A model generated the notes under the pieces. That model saw only the letters and a program-made list of their open reading frames with translations, had not been told where the DNA came from and searched no databases. From Macrostomum lignano (lineage: Eukaryota): a stretch of DNA of 64,000 nucleotides. The stretch is from positions 62,001 to 126,000 of the forward strand of contig NIVC01002014.1 of NCBI GenBank assembly GCA_002269645.1, read 5' to 3'. Made by a program: the position numbers and the translations under genes. Positions 41,502-50,821 of this stretch are shown one piece after another (position 1 is the stretch's first letter; each line of letters starts with the position of its first letter).

Positions 41502-42873
41502 ACAATCCACCTGCCAGGAAAATATTTTTTCTGAGACACTTCAAGATCAGAGAATTACACGATATTTCAAACACTGACAGCTAAATGACAGACTGACTTA
41601 AGTCGAAGCTGGCGCGCAGACCCTCAGCTGAAAATTCACTCTAGGCTGTCAGCAAGAATAATTGTAATGACTTTTGAGAACTTGTCGATAAAGAAATGGG
41701 AGGATACTGAGCATGGGGATCTGAGTCTGGCATCCCATTGGGATGTTTAGACAGACAAAAGCAGCCCTCCTGCGCCCGCCACTTCAGCAGTCAAGTGGCG
41801 ACATTCATATGAATCCTTGCGGCAGTGGCCGGGCCGGAGTCCATGCAGCTCAGCGGACTCATCCGAATGCTCACTCAGCTATGAAATCGGCTCAGCTGAT
41901 CTCTCTGTTATTTTGACTGCCACACGTGAAGGCAGAATCCGGTCACAGTGCCACCTCACTGTAAGCTTCTTCCACCTTATTACTCAACTATCGAGTTAAA
42001 AAAGCGTCTTTTATTATTTATTGAGTGAATCCTTTTGTCCTCCTAATAATTTGTTTCCAGCTTCAGTTGAAACTTCACTGTGTCTGTGTTAGTTCTCCAT
42101 CCATTTAGAGTAAATACTAATTATAAATTGATATTTAACTAGCTTCTAATTCTAATATAAATCCCTTATAGCAACATTACAACATTGAATTAGCTCGTAC
42201 AGCAACAGCAGTGTCAGTTGCATTACAGTATCGGTACTTCTGGAACAGATGTATTCCCTATAGTGCCCCTTTGTAGTGATGGATTTTGGTTAGTGAGCGG
42301 CCGTCTGCAACCAGCATGCGCTGCTTGAGCATCTGATCACCGTAAAGGGCATGCATATTCAAGCGGACTGTCTTCGGTCGTTCAATCCTGGGTCGTTGCT
42401 AGGCGGTTGCTATAGGCAGCGTATGCATGTTCCTAATTTAAAAGTAAGTGGCGAAGGCTCCGATCGCGAACGGGATCGCGCGTGAAAGTGTTTGGCTTTT
42501 GGGAGCGCTGATTGGGGCTGCTGGAGCGCGGCCACACGAGTTGCCTGGCAATTCAAAATTTTGCTGCTGTAAGAACTCGAACTCATGCAGAACGCGAAAG
42601 CGCAAAATGCCACGGAAATGACTAGGAGATTTGAATCTGATATTCGAAAATCACTACTTTAATCATTCAGTATATGTGATTGATGGGACACAAACGACCT
42701 TTTTTATATTTTACTAATTTTAGTCACCTGGACTTGGATAAACAATCAATTGATCAAAGCGTCTTTCCATCGTCACTCAAAGCAAAAAAATCATGCGAAA
42801 TCCTTTTGAAATTCATCCATGAAATTTGCGAATTCGTACATGTAAATTGGATCATGCTTGAACGTCATCACTT

Positions 42874-43118
42874 GCACGCGAAGGCGTATTCAGCATGCCA
42901 GTGAAGTATGAGACAGACTAGGCCCATGGGCTAAGGTCTGCGATGCTTCACGCCTGCCCCTATCTTCAGCAGGTCAAGGCTGGTGGGAGGTCTGCACCCT
43001 CTATTTGCCTCTGGCAGCCGCAGACCCCCCCCCCCACGCTGTCTCGCAAGTCGACCCAGGGTACTCGTCCCCGCGTGTGTTCAAGGCAGTCCCTAGGGCT
43101 GCTGGACAGACTGGGCTC
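42874..43118 (+). ncRNA. HDV-like (nested double pseudoknot) self-cleaving ribozyme at the LINE 5' end
   Basis: P1 GCACGCG 42874-42880 / CGCGTGT 43072-43078 (G1-U wobble). P2 CCCA 43055-43058 / TGGG 43112-43115. P3 GGG 43059-43061 / CCC 43069-43071. L3 TACTCGT. P1.1 AC 43063-43064 / GT 43079-43080. P4 43081-43106. J4/2 CAGAC with putative catalytic C43107. Confidence 0.8.
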
Positions 43119-43393
43119 CGGCGCTGGCGACCCTATCCAGTGGCTTCGGCCGAATTTGGGTATGCGGGTCTGGCTCGCCAACCTGCAGGCCGTGGTACTG
43201 CTCAACGTACTCTCTAATGCCTAAGGTGTTGACCGTGCCGATGGGCTGGAAGGCCGGGGAGTAGTCCGGTCGCAAGCGGTCCCCCTCCTGGTGTCGGGCC
43301 AGCCTTGAGGGTGCTATTGGCCTACTGCCCGGTCAGGTGGAGCGGCCGGGTGGGTACCGCGCCCCTTTGAGGGTAGCCCACCAACCTTTTATC

Positions 43394-44914
43394 ATGGCCT
43401 TCGAGCCGACTATGGATAAACAAGCTATTTCTAGGGATGGGGACCCTTCTAAACCCCAACCTCAGTCCGAAGGACCGGCCGGCCCTGCTGGCAGATCCCA
43501 ACCGACTGATTCAACTGTGGCAAAGGAAGGACCGGCTGGCTCTGCTGGCAGATCCGACCAGAGCTACCAAACTCAAAATACCCTAAGACCTGCCAGCTCC
43601 GCTGGTGGATCTAAGGGAACCGCGAGCTCTGAGCCTAAAGGACCGGCCAAATCTGGCAGATCCGATGAAGCTCAGCGGGCTCGGCTTGAGCGCAAACGCG
43701 CTAAACAACGCGCCAAAAGGCAGGCCAAGAAGGGAGCTGCGGGGGCCAAAGCGGCGGCGTCCACCATGGATGCTGAAGCGACTGGAGTCCCAAGGCAACC
43801 AGGCGGGCCGGCCGGTGGAAGCTCCAGTAGTTCAGCGGCGGCGCTCCCTGGAGCTGCTGCCGCGGCTGCTGAGGCCGAAACCACGGCGCAACAAATGGCC
43901 ACTGCCAACAAGGAGGTTCCTTCGGGAGCTACCTTTGCGGCGAAGGCCAAGGCCAAAATCCCGGGAGTGATCATCCAAGGTCGCGACCAGGACTGGACCA
44001 CTGATCAGCTTCAAAAAGTGTGGAGTGCTGTTGACTCCTATCTGATTGAGCTGACTGTCGAGGAGGGAATCTCCATCGGCGTTGAGCGGATGGTGCTGCG
44101 AAGCACATTCGTTCTTATTGCTCCTAGCAGCGAGGAGGACGCTCGGCGGCTGCTCCAGCGGCTACCGACGGTCTCCTTGGATGCTGACCTTGGCGGAGCT
44201 CTTTTTCTTCGCGAGGGCCAGCGTCCAAAGACGATACCCTATGTGGTTTTCGTCCCTGCTAAGAGCACCGCAGCTGGACCAGACGTTATTCGCCGGGTCC
44301 TACTGCGTCTGAACCCCGACCTCCCTGCTAGTGGACTGGTGTATCACCGTAAAGTCCGCAGGGGGGAGACGGGCAACTCAATTGTCCTCGGCCTTTCCAG
44401 CACTTGGGCGAGTCGGTACCCTAATGGATCCTCTTTCCAGCTGGGTGCCCTCAAGCTCAAGTTGCGCCGAGGAAAGTCTGCCAAAGGGAAGGCTACTGCC
44501 AACCCCGGCATCTCCGGCAAGAGCGGGGCGCAGTCTAAGGCCCAAGGAAAGGCGCAAGCCGATCCCAAAGCCAAAGCTGCATCTCGCCCCTCTGCTAGCA
44601 GCAGTTCGGCGACCGCGGTAACGGCTCCGGCCGAGCCCCGGGAACCAAACCTGCCAGTCGGAGAAGGAGTTGAGGACGAGGCCGGGTCTTCGGAATCCGA
44701 GCTCTCCTCGGCCACCTTGGTGGGGTCTGAAGGTAAAGATGCAGGTGAGGAAGCTTCCTCCATCCTGTCATCGGAGCCTGAGGAGTCTGCTGGGGGGCCG
44801 GTGGGGGTGAGGAGGCCATGGACGTCGACCAACTCCCATCTCCCAGTCAAGCCCCAGCGGCCTGGGACGAGGACGATCTGTTGTCCAAGTCTCCTTGATG
44901 ACCCTGGGCTCTAG
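43394..44914 (+). CDS. LINE ORF1 (506 aa from first ATG), DUF4780-like central domain
   Basis: Long open frame with a basic coiled segment (ARLERKRAKQRAKRQAKK). Central region DQLQKVWSAVDSYLIE..LLRLNPDLP..SIVLGL..FQLGALKL resembles DUF4780 of LOA ORF1 (recalled similarity, not searched). Confidence 0.8.
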   Translation: MAFEPTMDKQAISRDGDPSKPQPQSEGPAGPAGRSQPTDSTVAKEGPAGSAGRSDQSYQTQNTLRPASSAGGSKGTASSEPKGPAKSGRSDEAQRARLERKRAKQRAKRQAKKGAAGAKAAASTMDAEATGVPRQPGGPAGGSSSSSAAALPGAAAAAAEAETTAQQMATANKEVPSGATFAAKAKAKIPGVIIQGRDQDWTTDQLQKVWSAVDSYLIELTVEEGISIGVERMVLRSTFVLIAPSSEEDARRLLQRLPTVSLDADLGGALFLREGQRPKTIPYVVFVPAKSTAAGPDVIRRVLLRLNPDLPASGLVYHRKVRRGETGNSIVLGLSSTWASRYPNGSSFQLGALKLKLRRGKSAKGKATANPGISGKSGAQSKAQGKAQADPKAKAASRPSASSSSATAVTAPAEPREPNLPVGEGVEDEAGSSESELSSATLVGSEGKDAGEEASSILSSEPEESAGGPVGVRRPWTSTNSHLPVKPQRPGTRTICCPSLLDDPGL

Positions 44915-44937
44915 CCAGATATTGCATTTAATACAGT

Positions 44938-47900
44938 ATGACTAAGCTCCACGCTGCCAAAGGAGCGACATTCTGTCTGCAAATAAATTTACAGCATTGC
45001 GTATCTGCGTCAGTAAATCTGATGAAGATTGCTGAGCTGTACAGGCCAGGCCTCATCCTGATCCAGGAACCCTGGATGCGCAACGGTAAGTTGCCCAACA
45101 TTCCCTCTGGCTACTCTGATTTTTATGTGTGTGGCCCGGGGAACAGCCGCCCTAGAGCGGCTATCCTCGCTGCTAGCCATCTCCAGGCTTGGCTGAGGAC
45201 TGATCTCTCTGATGGAGACCTTTGCGTCATCCAATCTAATCATTTCTCTCCGCGTACGTGTCTTGTTGCCTCGGTTTATATCCCAGGCGACAGAGACCCT
45301 GCTCCGAGAGTTTACTGCGCCTTGCGCAGTACTGCGAGTCCCAGAACGCTGAGCTGTGCTTAGGGGGCGACCTCAACGCGCACCACAAGCACTGGGGCAG
45401 CAAAGATACCAACACTAGAGGAGAGGAGCTTCTGGCCCTCATCTCTAACACAAACCTCATGCTCTGCAACCGCGGCAGCACTCCTACCTTTAATAATGGC
45501 AGATGGACCGAGGTCCTCGACGCCACACTCGTTACCCCAAGACTCTTTGACAGAGTCAAGGAGTGGAGAGTCTGGTCTGAGGAGCCCTCCCTGTCTGACC
45601 ACTGCTTTATTGCCTTTAATATCGCGGACACTAAAACCCAGTCTCCGATCACTTGGAGACGCAATATCCGCAACACTGATTGGGCGGCCTACAAGGCTGC
45701 CCTTGATCTGCACCTGCAGGAACTCACGGACTTACGTCCGATTGAGACCTGCGAGGATGTGGATCATATGGCTGAGACGCTGACAGGTTGCATTATTGCA
45801 GCCTACGAAGCGGCTTGTCCTGCTCGCGCCTACAGAGGCAAGACCTCGGCGCCGTGGTGGAACCCGGAGCTGGGGAAACTCAGGCGGAAGGCCAAAAGCC
45901 TTCATCGCCGTGCCATGAAGACCGGAAACCCGGAGGACATGGAGCTTTTCCGGCAAGCCTCCCGCAATTTCAAATCTGAAGTGCGCAAGGCCAAGGAATG
46001 TAAGTGGCGCCAATTCTGCAATGAATTGGATCAAGACAGACCTACTTCTAGGCTTGTCAAGGCCCTTACAATGGACAAAATGTCCAAATTAGCCATGATC
46101 AAAAAAGATGATGGCTCTCTTACTAAAGACCCTGAAGAAGTGCTTCAGCATATGCTTAGCACATTCTTCCCGAGGGTACCTACTGCTAGACCGGAGCCCA
46201 ACCATTCGATGGATGGAGCCACCCTAGCGGCGGGCATTGTCACTGAAGACCTAATCGCTCGTGCGGTCAGAACCTTCAAACCCTTCAAATCTCCTGGACC
46301 TGATGGTATCTACCCTGTTCTCCTTCGTGAAGCAGCCAAGATACCCTCGTTCCTGAGACTCACCCGCAATCTTATGCGGGCCTCTATCCAGCTGGGATAC
46401 GTTCCCAAAAGCTGGACTGAAGCTCGAGTAGTCTTTATTCCCAAACCTGGGAAGGGTGACTACCAAAGCGTCAAGGCCTTCCGGCCAATTAGCTTAACGT
46501 CAGCAATGCTTAAGCTCACTGAGAGGCTTATTCTCTGGCGGCTGCTCTCCTGCGAGCTGACAGCGATGCCCCTCAGCAATAATCAGCACGCCTTCCGTAC
46601 CGGGAGGTCGACTGACAGCGCCCTGCATGCGATTGTCGAAAAGATTGAACGGGCGGTACTGGGTGACGGTTACGCCCTGGCTCTCTTTCTTGACATTGTT
46701 GGCGCCTTCGACAACGTTATCTTTGAAGCGTTTCAGAGGGCCCTTCAAAATCGCAAAGCTCATGCTACCCTCATACGGTGGATCATGTACATGATCTCCA
46801 ACCGTACGGTCACTGCCCAACTTCTTGGGCAAACTGCCTCCACCAGAGTCTGTAAGGGTGGACCCCAAGGCGGAGTCCTCACCCCGACGCTCTGGAACCT
46901 GGTCATGGACGCTCTTCTGAGTGACTCCCGACCTGACCCCGTCTTCAAAGTCGGGTATGCTGATGACGTCACGGCCATTGTGGCAGGACCGTCTCCCAGC
47001 ACGCTCAGGGATCTGATGCAGAGCTTTATCCGCAAAGCAGAATCCTGGGCCAATGACAATGGTTTGGAACTCTCTGAGCCCAAAACCGTTGCCATTATGT
47101 TTACCAGCAGACTACGCTGGAACATACGTCCTCTGCAGCTCTACGGCAGAGATATTGCCTTCGCGCACCAGACCAGATGTCTCGGGGTCACACTTGACCA
47201 CCGGCTCAACTGGTCCTTCCACGTGAAAGCAAAAGCTAAGCGTGCCTCAGCCATCCTGGCCCAGCTCCGACGAGCACTTGGCACTTCTTGGGGTCTATCC
47301 CCAAAGCGGCTTTGGTGGATCTATACTTCCGTAGTTAGACCTGCCATTACGTACGCCTCTGTTGTCTGGGTTAGCGCTACCCAGGTCAAAAGCCATGCAG
47401 ACCTGCTCAACACGATCCAAGGCAGAGCGTGTAGGCTCATCTGCAACGCCACCAGGTCCACGCCCTTTGCTGGCATGGGGGCCTTTCTTAATCTTCCGCC
47501 TCTTGACCTCTTCATCAGGGGTGAGGCGGCTAGAACGACGCGGCGTCTAATTGATGCCGGCGTCAAATTCATTTACATGAGAGCACCTGCTAAGCGGAAC
47601 CTTGTCCCGCATAGCGATCTGTGCCTCAACTTTCTCAACGAGTGTCAGGCCAATCGCGTCTTCACCGATGGCATTGCCTCAACGCTCAACCTGAGACAGC
47701 GCTACTCCGTAGCTATCGACTCGCGCGATAACATCAATGACCATTGGAACCCTGGTGAGCTTCATTGCTACACCGACGGTTCTAAGCAGTCAGCCAACAC
47801 CGGCTTTGGTGTTGGAATCTTTCTGAACGGGAGGGTCATCGCTACCCACGCTCAATACACTGGGGTCAACTCCAGTGTTTTCCAAAATGAAGTTCTGGCC

Positions 47901-48677
47901 ATCAGCTCCTGCACTGTAGAGCTTCTCGCCACTGGCGTTACTGGTAAGAACATCATTTTCCATTCGGACAGCCAAGCTGCCTTGCACGCCATCAGTGGCT
48001 GCAGCACCAACTCTGCTACAGTCCTTGACTGTATCAAACTCCTCAATGTGTTGGGTTCCGCCAACAAAATTACCCTTAAGTGGGTTCCGGGGCATGTGGG
48101 GATCCGAGGAAATGAGTTGGCTGACACCCTTGCAAAAGTTGGTGCCTCCGGCTCCTCTCTCGGCCCCGAACCTCTTGTCCCGATTCCTGGCTGTGTCATC
48201 GACTCGCGCATCAAAGCGTGGATCAGGACTCAGCACCGCTCGACTTGGGCGAACCGCACGAACTGCAGGCAATCCAGAGGCGCTGTCCCTCAGCCCTCTC
48301 ACCAGCTCCGGAAGCTCCTCTTGCGCCTCTCGCGCAGAGACATCCGGGCTGCCACCATGACCCTCTCTGGTCACGGCTGCTTCTCCAGGCACCAGTACCT
48401 GCAGGGCAACGCCACCAACGCCACCTGTAGTTTCTGCAACTCAGGTGACGAAACCGCTGAGCATTTCGTCAGCATCTGTCCCGCCTTCACGCGGGCCAGA
48501 CTCACTTACCTCGGGCCACACACATCTATTACTGAAGCGTGCAAACCCGAAAACTTTAATCAGCTCATGCGCTACCTTCGGGCCACCCGCAGGGCTGAAC
48601 TCTCCTTTCCAGAGAGCACCATAGCTGCTGGCGACACTGGGGGACCTCCCTGGGCGGCGCCAACCCTCCGTCCATAG
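44938..48677 (+). CDS. LINE ORF2: AP endonuclease, reverse transcriptase, RNase H, CCHC finger; 1-bp frameshift near 45305
   Basis: APE motifs QINLQH, LIQEPW, GDLNAHH, LSDH. RT motifs KSPGPDG, FRPISLTS, GGPQGGVLTP and YADD at 46956-46967. RNase H YTDGS/QNE/SDS/GNELAD. C-terminal CSFC-x8-H-x4-C. The N-terminus is in the frame of 44938 and the rest in the frame of 45258. Confidence 0.93.
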
Positions 48678-50821
48678 CGACGCGTCGGCCGTTCAGGGAC
48701 TAGCGGAATGGGCGCCCGCGCCTTCCCGCTGTGTCCCCTCCGGGACAGCCCTGCAGCTAAGTCAAGTAAGTCAAGAACGTCATCACTTAAATAAGGCAAT
48801 GTATACATGCATATCGGCAACTACATGTAGGCGTCCAAGACGACCGAAATTGCGATAATTAATTGACAATTGAATTGCTTGCAAGTGAATTGTAATTTTT
48901 GCAATTTTTGCTTACGATTATTGAATAGCAATTATCGCAAATTTATTTTGAAAAGTTAATTCAATAAGATAATGGAATGATTTCACCATAGTCATGATTC
49001 GATCTGTTTCGAATGATTTTCTGTAGGGGCAAAAACAAAATTTAAATAACAAAAATGAGAATTTAGTCAAAACATTCTTATTTTATAAATGTAGGCCTGG
49101 CCTAATGAACTTTTTTATGCTAGAAATTAACCATTTAATTTTTGTTTGGTTTTAAAAAATAAAATGCTTTGATTTTAAAAGCTTATTATTATCCCCATGC
49201 ATTAAAACTTGATTTATTTGGTAGGCCTATATTTAATGATCAATGTGCTTCCCAACCCCATCAAGTTTGATTTTAATTTTTCTATGCCAATTGTTAAATA
49301 GGTTGTAAATTAGGCCTATCAAATAAAAAAATCAAAGTACCTTAGTAATCTGCAATCACCCCATTCCAAATTTTCTGGATCCCAATGAAATGAAACCAAT
49401 AGAATAGGTCTAGTCTAGTCTAGTCAGTGTGGCAGAACCAGGTAGTAGGCCTAACGATGATGATATGATCTATTTTAATGATATTCTGACGATCCATCTA
49501 TCTAGGCTAGGCCCCTAAGTCATATCTAATATCCATATCTGTATTTTAGGGCTCGCAGTCGCAGTCAGCTCAAACAAGCCTGCTGCTGGCACTTGTACTC
49601 AAAATTAAGCATATTCAAAATTGATGATGTATCGAAAGTTGCTTTAGGAATAACTAACTCTGTACAGTGAAATGTATGTAACTCCCGTTTTTTTATAAAC
49701 GAATAGAAAGCAATACTATAACTCTAGCAAACTATACTATACTATAGCAAACTGTAACTCCCGTTTTTTTATAAACGAATAGAAAGCAATACTAATAATT
49801 CAGTTGTGATTAGGCTACAATATTGAATTTAGACGGTACTAGTTTGTTTGTCATTGTGCAGGCAATATGTACGAGTATCCAGCATGCAGTAAAGGCAACT
49901 AGCATGCTGGATATGCATGTTTATCGTACCTAAAATAGTGCTGAATTCGCGTATAAACTGCTGACACATTGTGCTGAATTCGCGTATAAATGCTGACACG
50001 GGTGATAATGGTTTAAAGTTTATGAACATGCGTGCAGAATTGAAAGTCTGCGACTGCGACGCCGCGCGCGCGACTTTCAGTATCAGTAGGAACAGTGCAA
50101 CGCAAGATATTAAGACTACAGTTCATTTCTTTTCTGTTTGTACTAATGTTCTGAGAGTCTGATGGTTGCCATGCATCAGTGCATAACCCCAGGGGCCGCA
50201 AGCTGGGTATCCATGGTTGATGATTAAGTTGACGTCACGACCTGGCTGGCTGGAGTTTCGGAAAATTTGGATAGTTTATATAATTTATATAGCCTATGTT
50301 GCATTTATAGGTTTTTCATATTTTAAATAGTTTTAAATATACATTTAGGCCTACATTATTTGTTATTCTTATAAATTGAAATTGCTAGTTGATTTACAAT
50401 TAATGACCATTAATCAGGGGTCATTACTATTAAACCTATTAAATGACATGAAGTAAAATGAAATGACATTTTGATCTATGTTGACTTAGCTAAAATTGGT
50501 ATAATAGGTTATATAGGCCTAATATATTATTAGTGATTATTAGATGGAAAAAGTTTTCTAAATATAAAAAATCTTTTTTATTATTGCTATTGTTGTTTTC
50601 TTAAAACTTTCTTTGACAAGTATTAATGATAAAATGTGAATATAATTTCTGATATTATTTAATTCATTTTCTAATAATTTTTGTTATGTTAGAATGTCTA
50701 ATAGTAAGTTTATACTAGCATTGATGACTATGATATAAATTGTTTAGCTTTTTTAATTCTTTTAGTTTTTATTAAAAGTCTTAAAAGTCTTAGTTAAAAG
50801 TCTTAGTTTTTTATTATTGTA

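What the first reader, a model, noticed from the sequence alone, without database searches (positions are those of the whole stretch)
42874..43118. HDV-like self-cleaving ribozyme whose cleavage site is exactly the 5' boundary of a full-length LOA-clade LINE
Seen: the first base after the TSD (G42874) opens a 7-bp P1 (GCACGCG/CGCGTGT) with the canonical G1-U wobble. P3 is GGG/CCC around a 7-nt L3 UACUCGU that keeps the U20/G25 equivalents. P1.1 covaries (AC/GU instead of CC/GG). An 8-bp P4 is followed by J4/2 C-A-G-A-C (the C-N-R-A pattern) and P2 CCCA/UGGG. Known: HDV-like ribozymes process the 5' ends of R2, RTE, L1Tc and the LOA-clade element Baggins. Inferred: this copy frees itself from read-through transcripts, which explains the precise 5' end. 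I do not know of one described in a flatworm LOA family.
Basis: partly seen in the sequence, partly recalled or inferred. Interest (0 to 1): 0.88.

Follow-up and report, generated by a model that had tools for sequence, protein, structure and literature searches.

The report
HDV-like ribozyme heading a flatworm LINE
The first 242 bases of a Macrostomum LINE retrotransposon can fold into the double-pseudoknot of an HDV-like self-cleaving ribozyme whose cut would fall on the element's first base; related elements keep the fold through compensating changes, but this is a further example of a known trick, not a new one.

Summary
P1 begins at G42874, the first base after a perfect 14-bp target-site duplication.

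A motif match alone is weak evidence: loose HDV descriptors hit hundreds of times in this window. Three other results carry the case.
- A stringent descriptor starts at only about 3 other positions in 128 kb.
- A sister family (L001, ORF2 57% identical) shows the same fold from its contig's first base. P1, P1.1, P2 and P4 have different sequences but still pair. The L3 CGU and the junction C are kept.
- Two distant LINEs (L055, L056) carry the same architecture in their sense-strand 5' UTRs.

The 174-nt J1/2 is a closed three-hairpin domain, also conserved.

Caveats:
- No Rfam HDV-like model matches; the long J1/2 makes that expected.
- Only four sequences are available, and the covariation alignment was cut to fit the structure.
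- The relatives have G1-C instead of G1·U, and two lack the junction A.
- At least ten other related loci show no motif.
- Cleavage is untested, and the LOA-clade assignment could not be tested.
- This copy has a frameshift in ORF2.

Verdict: probably a real HDV-like ribozyme, a new member of a known kind, of moderate interest.

The parts
42860..42873 (+). 5' copy of the 14-bp target-site duplication GAACGTCATCACTT
   Evidence: The exact string occurs only at 42860 and 48775. Joining the flanks gives a continuous empty site.
42874..42880 (+). P1 5' strand, GCACGCG. The predicted cleavage site is the phosphodiester between 42873 and 42874.
   Evidence: Pairs with 43072-78 over 7 bp, with G42874·U43078. 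It is the first base after the TSD. L001 starts at the homologous base.
42881..43054 (+). J1/2: a 174-nt peripheral domain closed by a stem (42884-86 with 43045-47, 42891-94 with 43038-41) and holding three hairpins
   Evidence: MFE fold -67.5 kcal/mol, z -1.85. L001 folds to the same architecture. The consensus fold has 11 pairs with double changes. L055's J1/2 is also closed, z -3.9.
42901..42951 (+). Strongly conserved long hairpin inside J1/2
   Evidence: 88% identical over 41 nt to L001, at the same offset from the 5' end (33-73 in both). Two compensatory pairs. Function unknown.
43055..43058 (+). P2 5' strand, CCCA
   Evidence: Pairs with 43112-15. The homologous P2 in L001 is CUCAGA with UCUGAG, and in L056 AACCUGAA with UUCAGGUU.
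43059..43071 (+). P3 (GGG with CCC) enclosing L3 UACUCGU. U43062 and G43067 are the U20 and G25 equivalents.
   Evidence: L3 ends in CGU in all four sequences.
43072..43078 (+). P1 3' strand, CGCGUGU
43079..43080 (+). 3' half of P1.1 (GU), pairing with A43063 and C43064 of L3
   Evidence: Both P1.1 pairs change on both sides among the relatives: AC/GU, CU/AG, CC/GG, CU/AG.
43081..43106 (+). P4 hairpin: 8 bp (43085-92 with 43096-103) plus two outer pairs (43081-82 with 43105-06)
   Evidence: The relatives have hairpins of different sequence at the same place.
43107..43111 (+). J4/2, CAGAC. C43107 is the candidate general-acid cytosine and A43110 the candidate minor-groove adenine.
   Evidence: A C sits 4-5 nt before P2' in all four sequences. 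C is the first J4/2 position and the last position is optional (PMC10879173). C57 and A60 play these roles in the C. briggsae ribozyme structure (PMC13635239).
43112..43115 (+). P2 3' strand, UGGG
43394..44914 (+). ORF1 (first AUG at 43394; the open frame runs from 43337)
   Evidence: 32% identical to L001's ORF1 overall and 40% in the central domain. No Pfam hit.
44974..48677 (+). ORF2 (APE, RT, RNase H), broken by one frameshift near 45306-45312
   Evidence: Pfam hits. tblastn with P0002 and P0001 splits into two frames at element nt 2433 and 2439.
48758..48774 (+). 3' tail, about two copies of TAAGTCAAG
   Evidence: L001 ends with the related motif CTAAGTCAA.
48775..48788 (+). 3' copy of the TSD

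Best explanation
The 5' UTR of this Macrostomum LINE begins with a large HDV-like self-cleaving ribozyme, 42874-43115.

Inferred mechanism:
- The element is transcribed as part of a longer RNA, either by read-through from an upstream promoter or from an upstream tandem copy.
- The RNA folds into the nested double pseudoknot, with two stacks: P1-P1.1-P4 and P2-P3.
- The structured 174-nt J1/2 domain holds the outer ends of P1 and P2 together.
- C43107, with a divalent metal ion positioned near the L3 U43062/G43067 pair, catalyses attack of the 2'-OH of U42873 on the adjacent phosphate.
- The product is an RNA that begins with 5'-OH G42874. This is exactly the first base that is later copied into new insertions.

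Shown here: the fold, its position at the TSD boundary, and its conservation with compensatory changes.
Inferred: catalysis, the role of J1/2, and the source of the co-transcript.

The family-level ribozyme is more secure than the activity of this particular copy. The copy keeps every core position but has a frameshifted ORF2.
For: 1. All helices and junctions are present in the right order.
2. P1 starts on the first base after a perfect 14-bp TSD.
3. A stringent descriptor finds only about 3 other start positions in 128 kb of window, and none of those has a 7-bp P1.
4. L001, a sister family with ORF2 57% identical, starts its contig at the homologous base. Its conserved hairpin lies at the same offset, 33-73.
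5. L001 has the same fold with different helix sequences. P1 is GCCUGC with GCAGGC, P1.1 is CU/AG, P2 is CUCAGA with UCUGAG, and P4 is a 10-bp hairpin. P3 is the same and L3 is UCUCCGU.
6. L056 and L055, with ORF2 about 36% identical, carry the same architecture in the sense-strand 5' UTR. L056 has an 8-bp P2 and a canonical C-U-G-A junction.
7. A unified descriptor gives 15 cores in 985 kb. Four of them lie in roughly 8 kb of sense-strand LINE 5' UTR.
8. On the four cores, 60 of 60 cells pair and 13 of 15 pairs show double changes. Slid controls give 33-52% paired.
9. G1, the L3 CGU and the junction C are invariant.
10. J1/2 folds into the same closed three-hairpin domain in the window, L001 and L055.
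11. Published precedent exists. J1/2 spans 23 to more than 700 nt and P1 is 6-7 bp in R2 ribozymes (PMC3774820). Peripheral J1/2 helices activate large HDV-like ribozymes (PMC4908430).
Against: - No Rfam HDV-like model matches the window or the relatives, even at E up to 10. These models cannot absorb a 135-196-nt J1/2, so the negative result is weak.
- Only four sequences are available, and no second copy from the same genome could be obtained.
- The core alignment was cut to fit the structure, so 100% pairing is partly circular.
- The descriptor was tuned on the same sequences.
- The frozen descriptor found nothing in the sense strand of five new loci. L034, L035, L038, L049, L051 and L054 also lack the motif.
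- The relatives have G1-C rather than G1·U. L001 and L055 have C where the junction A is expected.
- P2 in the window is only 4 bp. An alternative P2'/J4/2 exists at 43151-43161.
- The nested MFE fold gives the window's P1 pairs a probability of only about 0.09.
- TSDs could not be found for L055 or L056.
Confidence: 0.78

Rival explanations
1. The precise 5' end is set by an internal RNA polymerase II promoter that starts transcription at G42874. The conserved pseudoknotted fold is then a non-catalytic 5' UTR structure, for example for translation initiation or for binding the element's own proteins.
For: - Many I-group and jockey-type LINEs use internal promoters. This rests on established knowledge and was not tested here.
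- In L1Tc the ribozyme cut coincides with the promoter's start site (PMC3185411, PMC3383444). A precise 5' end therefore does not discriminate between the two.
- The most conserved part of the UTR is the J1/2 hairpin at +28 to +78, not the ribozyme core.
- Two relatives depart from canonical core positions.
Against: - A promoter does not need the first 6-7 transcribed bases to pair with the segment that directly follows a P3/L3 hairpin.
- That pairing is kept through double changes in four sequences, together with P1.1 and P2.
- G1, the L3 G and the junction C are invariant. These are the positions expected to be kept for catalysis.
Confidence: 0.12
2. Both mechanisms operate, as in L1Tc. [quoted passage not shown]
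For: - L1Tc Pr77/L1TcRz is a precedent (PMC3383444, PMC3185411).
- The J1/2 hairpin shows sequence conservation beyond what its pairing requires: 88% over 41 nt, against much lower identity elsewhere in the UTR.
Against: There is no direct evidence for promoter activity. The hairpin also shows compensatory pairs, which point to a role as RNA.
Confidence: 0.25
3. The fold is a chance match of a permissive motif to a GC-rich 5' UTR.
For: - Loose descriptors hit hundreds of times per 64 kb.
- Even the final descriptor finds 11-12 cores in unrelated DNA, about 1 per 90 kb.
- Rfam finds nothing.
Against: - The hit starts on the one base fixed independently by the TSD.
- The fold recurs, with changed helix sequences, at the start of L001 and in the sense-strand 5' UTRs of L055 and L056.
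- About 0.09 chance cores are expected in that search space, and 4 were observed.
Confidence: 0.04

Closest known systems
[quoted passage not shown]
   Same: - Double-pseudoknot fold at the 5' end of a LINE RNA.
- P1 of 6-7 bp.
- Very long J1/2 loops, 23 to more than 700 nt between the P1 strands.
- Variable P4.
- Conserved P3/L3/P1.1 core and a catalytic C.
- Compensatory changes in P1 between species (PMC3774820).
   Different: - R2 is site-specific in 28S rDNA, is co-transcribed by Pol I, has a single ORF and a restriction-like endonuclease. In many species it cuts upstream, inside the 28S sequence.
- The element here has two ORFs with APE, RT and RNase H domains, is flanked by a 14-bp TSD at an ordinary AT-rich site, and would cut exactly at its own first base.
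L1TcRz / Pr77 of the Trypanosoma cruzi L1Tc (ingi clade) LINE
   Same: An HDV-like ribozyme occupies the first bases of an RNase H-bearing LINE with an APE endonuclease. Cleavage falls at element base +1 and frees the element from read-through transcripts (PMC3185411, PMC4035085).
   Different: L1TcRz is compact (77 nt) and doubles as a promoter. The candidate here spans 242 nt because of a structured 174-nt J1/2. Promoter activity here is unknown.
Baggins (LOA clade) and RTE HDV-like ribozymes
   Same: [quoted passage not shown] 2011, was not available to read).
   Different: No sequence or clade comparison with Baggins was possible here, so homology of either the element or the ribozyme is untested.
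Large drz-Agam-2 type ribozymes with a J1/2 peripheral helix (P1.2)
   Same: A helix within J1/2 brings the ends of P1 and P2 together. In that system it speeds cleavage by up to about 1000-fold (PMC4908430). The window, L001 and L055 all have a closing stem at the base of J1/2.
   Different: Here the domain is a three-hairpin multiloop with one highly conserved hairpin, not a single helix. Its effect on activity is untested.

Membership tests
HDV-like self-cleaving ribozymes | Nested double pseudoknot with the strand order P1 - J1/2 - P2 - P3 - L3 - P3' - P1' - P1.1 - P4 - J4/2 - P2' | tested here: met
   All strands are present in this order at 42874-43115. A stringent descriptor also finds it.
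HDV-like self-cleaving ribozymes | Cleavage site immediately 5' of the first P1 nucleotide, so the whole ribozyme stays on the 3' product | tested here: met
   Positional test only. P1 nucleotide 1 is G42874, the first base after the TSD. The cut itself was not observed.
HDV-like self-cleaving ribozymes | Catalytic cytosine at the first position of J4/2 | tested here: met
   With P4 extended by two pairs, C43107 directly follows P4. A C lies 4-5 nt before P2' in all four sequences. The feature definition comes from PMC10879173.
HDV-like self-cleaving ribozymes | L3 with the U20/G25-equivalent pair, the G being functionally important | tested here: met
   U43062 and G43067 are present. The G, within the CGU motif, is invariant in all four sequences. 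The U is replaced by G in L055. The feature comes from PMC13635239.
HDV-like self-cleaving ribozymes | Two-base-pair P1.1 between L3 positions 2-3 and the two bases after P1' | tested here: met
   A43063-U43080 and C43064-G43079 form P1.1. Both pairs covary in the relatives.
HDV-like self-cleaving ribozymes | Adenine three bases after the catalytic C, contacting P3 | tested here: inconclusive
   Present in the window (A43110) and in L056 (C-U-G-A). L001 has C-U-G-C and L055 has C-U-A-C instead.
HDV-like self-cleaving ribozymes | G1·U wobble closing P1 at the cleavage site | tested here: inconclusive
   Present in the window (G42874·U43078). L001, L055 and L056 have G1-C. The wobble is not universal: the very active C. 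briggsae ribozyme has C at +1 (PMC13635239).
HDV-like self-cleaving ribozymes | Match to a curated covariance model (the Rfam HDV-like families) at the gathering score | tested here: not met
   There is no HDV-like hit in the window or in L001, L055 or L056, even at E up to 10. This is expected, because the models are built on compact ribozymes and the J1/2 here is 135-196 nt. A version with J1/2 removed could not be submitted.
HDV-like self-cleaving ribozymes | Helices supported by covariation among homologues | tested here: met
   13 of 15 core pairs show double changes, and 0 of 500 shuffles reach the observed values. The test rests on only four sequences, and the segments were chosen for pairing.
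HDV-like self-cleaving ribozymes | Mg2+-dependent self-scission that is abolished by changing the catalytic C to U | not testable with these tools
   This needs a transcription and cleavage assay.
LOA-clade LINE | Reverse transcriptase groups with LOA, Baggins, Lian or Bilbo in a phylogeny with reference elements | not tested
   No reference LOA sequences could be reached. No hit carries a clade name.
LOA-clade LINE | Two ORFs, with ORF2 carrying APE endonuclease, RT and RNase H | tested here: met
   Pfam finds Exo_endo_phos_2, RVT_1 and RNase_H. The I, R1, Tad, ingi and Nimb groups share this layout, so it is not diagnostic.
Full-length, intact LINE copy | TSDs, a complete 5' UTR, both ORFs open, and a 3' tail | tested here: not met
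   The TSDs, 5' UTR, ORF1 and 3' tail are present. ORF2 is split by a frameshift near 45306-45312.

The most novel reading that the evidence does not exclude
This is a distinct sub-class of large HDV-like ribozymes, spread patchily through RNase H-bearing LINEs of flatworms and other aquatic invertebrates. Its conserved, structured J1/2 domain, and above all the near-invariant hairpin at +28 to +78, would be more than a passive clamp. It could act as a second function, such as an internal promoter, a binding site for the element's proteins or a translation start platform. Such a function might couple ribozyme folding to the element's life cycle. The sub-class would also work with G1-C and without the junction adenine.
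Probability: 0.2. Interest if true: 0.6.

Novelty: new member of a known kind. Interest (0 to 1): 0.45.

Why it matters
If the ribozyme is active, it explains how a dispersed flatworm LINE gets an exact 5' end without depending on its own promoter. It adds a macrostomid flatworm and an RNase H-bearing, two-ORF LINE lineage to the hosts of HDV-like ribozymes. It also provides a natural set of large ribozymes with a conserved multi-hairpin J1/2 domain, and with variants at the G1·U pair and the junction A. These could be used to test ideas about activation by peripheral domains. M. lignano can be made transgenic, so the role of the ribozyme in retrotransposition could be tested in vivo. The finding does not change the current picture, because the same strategy is established for R2, R4/Dong, RTE, L1Tc and Baggins.

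Tried and rejected
- **Rfam scans.** Scans of the window at gathering score, and of 42800-43200 and L001/L055/L056 at E up to 10, found no HDV-like family. Only weak hits came up (snoZ17, NPPA-AS1_3, int-alpA, CRISPR-DR9), which I treat as chance.
- **Metagenome scan.** The conserved J1/2 block GGCCCANGGGCTAAGGTC gave 32 loci. All were chance 18-mers with no flanking similarity and no ORF2.
- **ORF1 searches.** The full ORF1 was swamped by low-complexity words and gave 3 UniRef hits without contigs. The central-domain alignment gave nothing. An exact look-up of ORF1 was not on record.
- **Viral contig scan with ORF2.** No relative was found.
- **Other copies in the window.** None.
- **Loose HDV descriptors.** They gave hundreds of hits and were useless alone.
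- **Related loci without the motif.**
  - No convincing motif turned up in L034, L035, L038, L049, L051, L053, L054 or L057-L061.
  - A terminal 7-bp pairing in L034 does not sit next to a P3/L3 hairpin, so I rejected it.
  - I set aside a 9-nt-L3 hit in L056 at 861 in favour of the better fold that starts at 872.
- **TSD searches for L055 and L056.** Nothing was found, so their 5' ends rest only on composition shifts.
- **Nested MFE folding.** It cannot represent the pseudoknot and gave mixed support for P1.
- **Primary papers.** The descriptor and Baggins papers (PMC3159031, PMC3308841) are not held.
- **Literature.** Searches found no report of an HDV-like ribozyme in a Macrostomum LINE. 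The library is incomplete.

Full report
**1. What is at the coordinates**

The window holds one GC-rich insertion (about 55-62% GC) in AT-rich surroundings. The string GAACGTCATCACTT occurs exactly twice, at 42860-42873 and 48775-48788. Joining the two flanks restores a continuous site. The element is therefore 42874-48774 and its first base is G42874.

It carries these parts:
- ORF1: the open frame runs from 43337 and the first AUG is at 43394, ending at 44914. It has no Pfam match.
- ORF2: Pfam finds APE endonuclease, reverse transcriptase and RNase H domains.
- A 3' tail of about two TAAGTCAAG units.

ORF fragments are 95-98% identical to Macrostomum lignano proteins. M. lignano is a macrostomid flatworm.

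ORF2 is not intact. Its first ~110 residues align to relatives in one frame and the rest in another, with the break near 45306-45312.

**2. The proposed fold is there**

Read from the sequence:

| Part | Sequence | Coordinates |
|---|---|---|
| P1 | GCACGCG with CGCGUGU, 7 bp, G·U at the cleavage end | 42874-80 with 43072-78 |
| J1/2 | 174 nt | 42881-43054 |
| P2 | CCCA with UGGG | 43055-58 with 43112-15 |
| P3 and L3 | GGG with CCC around UACUCGU | 43059-71 |
| P1.1 | AC with GU | 43063-64 with 43079-80 |
| P4 | 8 bp, extendable by two outer pairs so that it stacks directly under P1.1 | 43081-43106 |
| J4/2 | CAGAC; C43107 is first, A43110 is three bases later | 43107-11 |

These positions match published descriptions of the family:
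- two coaxial stacks, P1-P1.1-P4 and P2-P3;
- the catalytic C at the first position of J4/2, with an optional last junction base (PMC10879173);
- an L3 U·G pair whose G is needed for activity, and an A three bases after the C that contacts P3 (PMC13635239).

A second possible P2' (UGGGU, 43157-61, preceded by C-G-A-A) also exists. The nearer P2' agrees with the spacing seen in the relatives.

**3. Is it more than chance?**

The motif alone is not significant.
- A loose descriptor with a J1/2 of up to 700 nt hit 820 and 760 times on the two strands of the window.
- A stringent version required a 3-bp Watson-Crick P3, a 7-nt L3 with U1 and G6, P1 of at least 6 bp, a 2-bp P1.1, P2 of at least 4 bp and a C-N-N-A junction. 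It gave four start positions in 128 kb.
- One of those is 42874, and it is the only one with a 7-bp P1.
- The chance that such a hit starts on one pre-specified base is therefore about 2×10⁻⁵.

Rfam finds no HDV-like family, at gathering score or at E up to 10. I give this little weight. Those models are built on compact ribozymes and cannot absorb a 174-nt insertion between P1 and P2. I could not submit a version with J1/2 removed to test that.

**4. Comparative evidence**

No second copy exists in the window, and no M. lignano assembly could be reached. The nearest relatives had to be fetched through ORF2 homologues.

*L001.*
- It is a 6.5-kb Logan contig. Its ORF2 is 57% identical to the window's and 68% identical to another M. 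lignano protein.
- It starts at the base homologous to G42874. The conserved block lies at offset 33-73 in both sequences.
- The contig runs about 530 bp into the 3' flank but stops exactly at the element's 5' end.
- It has the same P3 (GGG with CCC) and L3 UCUCCGU. The other helices differ in sequence but still pair:
  - P1 is GCCUGC with GCAGGC.
  - P1.1 is CU with AG.
  - P2 is CUCAGA with UCUGAG.
  - P4 is a 10-bp hairpin.

*L055 and L056.* These come from ENA metagenome assemblies. Their ORF2s are about 36% identical to the window's and 63% to each other. Both show the same plan in the sense-strand 5' UTR, 430-600 nt upstream of ORF1.
- L056 has these parts:
  - P1 is G872-G877 with C1033-38.
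  - J1/2 is about 135 nt.
  - P2 is AACCUGAA with UUCAGGUU.
  - P3 is ACC with GGU.
  - L3 is UCUACGU.
  - P1.1 is CU with AG.
  - P4 is CUGCAG-GAGA-CUGCAG.
  - J4/2 is G-C-U-G-A.
- L055 has these parts:
  - P1 is GGGCGCG with CGCGCCC, starting at 178.
  - J1/2 is 195 nt.
  - P3 is GCC with GGC.
  - L3 is GCCACGU.
  - P1.1 is CC with GG.
  - P2 is CGGU with ACUG.
  - J4/2 ends C-U-A-C.

Four of them are these LINE 5' UTRs. About 0.09 chance cores would be expected in the roughly 8 kb of sense-strand 5' UTR examined.

*Covariation on the four 38-nt cores.* All 60 cells pair and 13 of 15 pairs show changes on both sides. No shuffle out of 500 reaches the observed values, and sliding the partners drops pairing to 33-52%. 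G1, the L3 CGU and the junction C are invariant.

**5. Limits of that evidence**

- The cores were cut to fit the structure, so the 100% pairing is partly built in.
- The descriptor was refined on the same sequences.
- When frozen and applied to five newly fetched loci, it found nothing on the sense strand. At least six further relatives with 5' UTR sequence also lack the motif. The ribozyme is therefore patchy in this group, or too variable for my descriptor.
- I could not find TSDs for L055 or L056. Their 5' ends rest on composition shifts only.
- The relatives have G1-C, not G1·U. L001 and L055 have C where the junction A is expected. The first point is not disqualifying, because a very fast C. 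briggsae HDV-like ribozyme has C at +1 (PMC13635239). The second is unexplained.

**6. The J1/2 domain**

Folded on their own, the J1/2 segments of the window, L001 and L055 each give a closing stem near the P1 and P2 ends that encloses three hairpins.
- The MFE z-scores are -1.85, -2.15 and -3.86.
- The consensus fold of the window and L001 has 11 pairs with double changes.

This fits the reported activation of large HDV-like ribozymes by a J1/2 helix that pinches P1 and P2 together (PMC4908430). It also fits the 23 to more than 700 nt spacing seen in R2 ribozymes (PMC3774820).

One hairpin (42901-42951) is far more conserved than pairing requires: 88% over 41 nt. I cannot say what it does.

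**7. Mechanism and rivals**

*Best explanation (confidence about 0.78).* This is a genuine HDV-like ribozyme that trims read-through or tandem transcripts to begin at G42874.

*Main rival.* An internal promoter sets the 5' end and the fold is a non-catalytic UTR structure. This does not explain why the terminal 6-7 bases must pair next to a P3/L3 hairpin through compensatory changes, nor why the catalytic positions are invariant. The two mechanisms can coexist, as in L1Tc, where the cut and the transcription start coincide (PMC3185411).

*Pure chance.* This is disfavoured by the TSD coincidence and by recurrence in relatives.

**8. Comparison with known systems and novelty**

HDV-like ribozymes at LINE 5' ends are established for R2 (including a planarian R2), R4/Dong, RTE, L1Tc/ingi and Baggins (PMC3774820, PMC6765202, PMC4035085). 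This candidate works like those. I found no report for a Macrostomum LINE, but the library is incomplete.

The 'LOA clade' label could not be tested, and the domain layout is shared by several I-group clades.

I rate this a new member of a known kind. It is credible and tidy, with some interesting variants, but it would not surprise a specialist. Interest is 0.45.

Noticed in passing
window 45306-45312: ORF2 changes frame here. Residues 6-114 of the relatives align in one frame (element nt 2101-2433) and residues 117 onward in another (from element nt 2439). This copy is full-length in layout but cannot encode an intact ORF2, unless the break is an assembly error.
   Followed up: yes
window 42901-42951; L001 28-78: This hairpin inside J1/2 is 88% identical between two families whose ORF2s are only 57% identical. 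It lies at the same distance from the 5' end in both. That is more conservation than its pairing requires. Its function is unknown; it could be a promoter element, a protein-binding site or a folding clamp.
   Followed up: partly
window 43151-43161: There is an alternative 5-bp P2' (UGGGU, pairing with ACCCA at 43054-58) preceded by C-G-A-A-U-U. It would give a second HDV-like solution with a 70-nt P4 domain. L001 has no equivalent.
   Followed up: partly
L056 872-1072 and L055 178-451: HDV-like folds sit in the sense-strand 5' UTRs of two LINEs from ENA metagenome assemblies. Their ORF1 carries DUF4780 and their 3' tails are (GGTAA)n-like. L056 has an 8-bp P2 and a canonical C-U-G-A junction. 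Their 5' ends are not confirmed by TSDs.
   Followed up: partly
window 43320-43400; L001 500-560: A block just upstream of ORF1 is conserved between the two families (GGUGGGUAC and its flanks, about 75% identical). L001's ORF1 has no AUG near its start; its gene call uses GUG. Initiation may therefore be non-canonical or internal, as proposed for other ribozyme-headed LINEs.
   Followed up: no
L057 3997-4359: An ORF2 is followed after only 362 nt by a DUF4780 ORF1 on the same strand. This suggests head-to-tail tandem LINE copies, an arrangement that would produce read-through co-transcripts. The descriptor found no HDV-like motif there.
   Followed up: no
window about 10-575: A tandem array with a period of about 15 nt (CGGGTTT...) showed up as dozens of repeated P1 matches in the loose scan. 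Strong GC-skew blocks lie at about 2-4 kb and 18-19 kb of the window.
   Followed up: no
window 43469-43498 and 43526-43555: A 30-nt direct repeat (93% identical) lies inside the low-complexity N-terminal part of ORF1.
   Followed up: no
L034 236-292: The apparent first 7 bases of this related LINE (CGCCACG) pair perfectly with CGUGGCG 50 nt downstream. No adjacent P3/L3 hairpin is present, so this is a terminal stem that is not HDV-like.
   Followed up: partly
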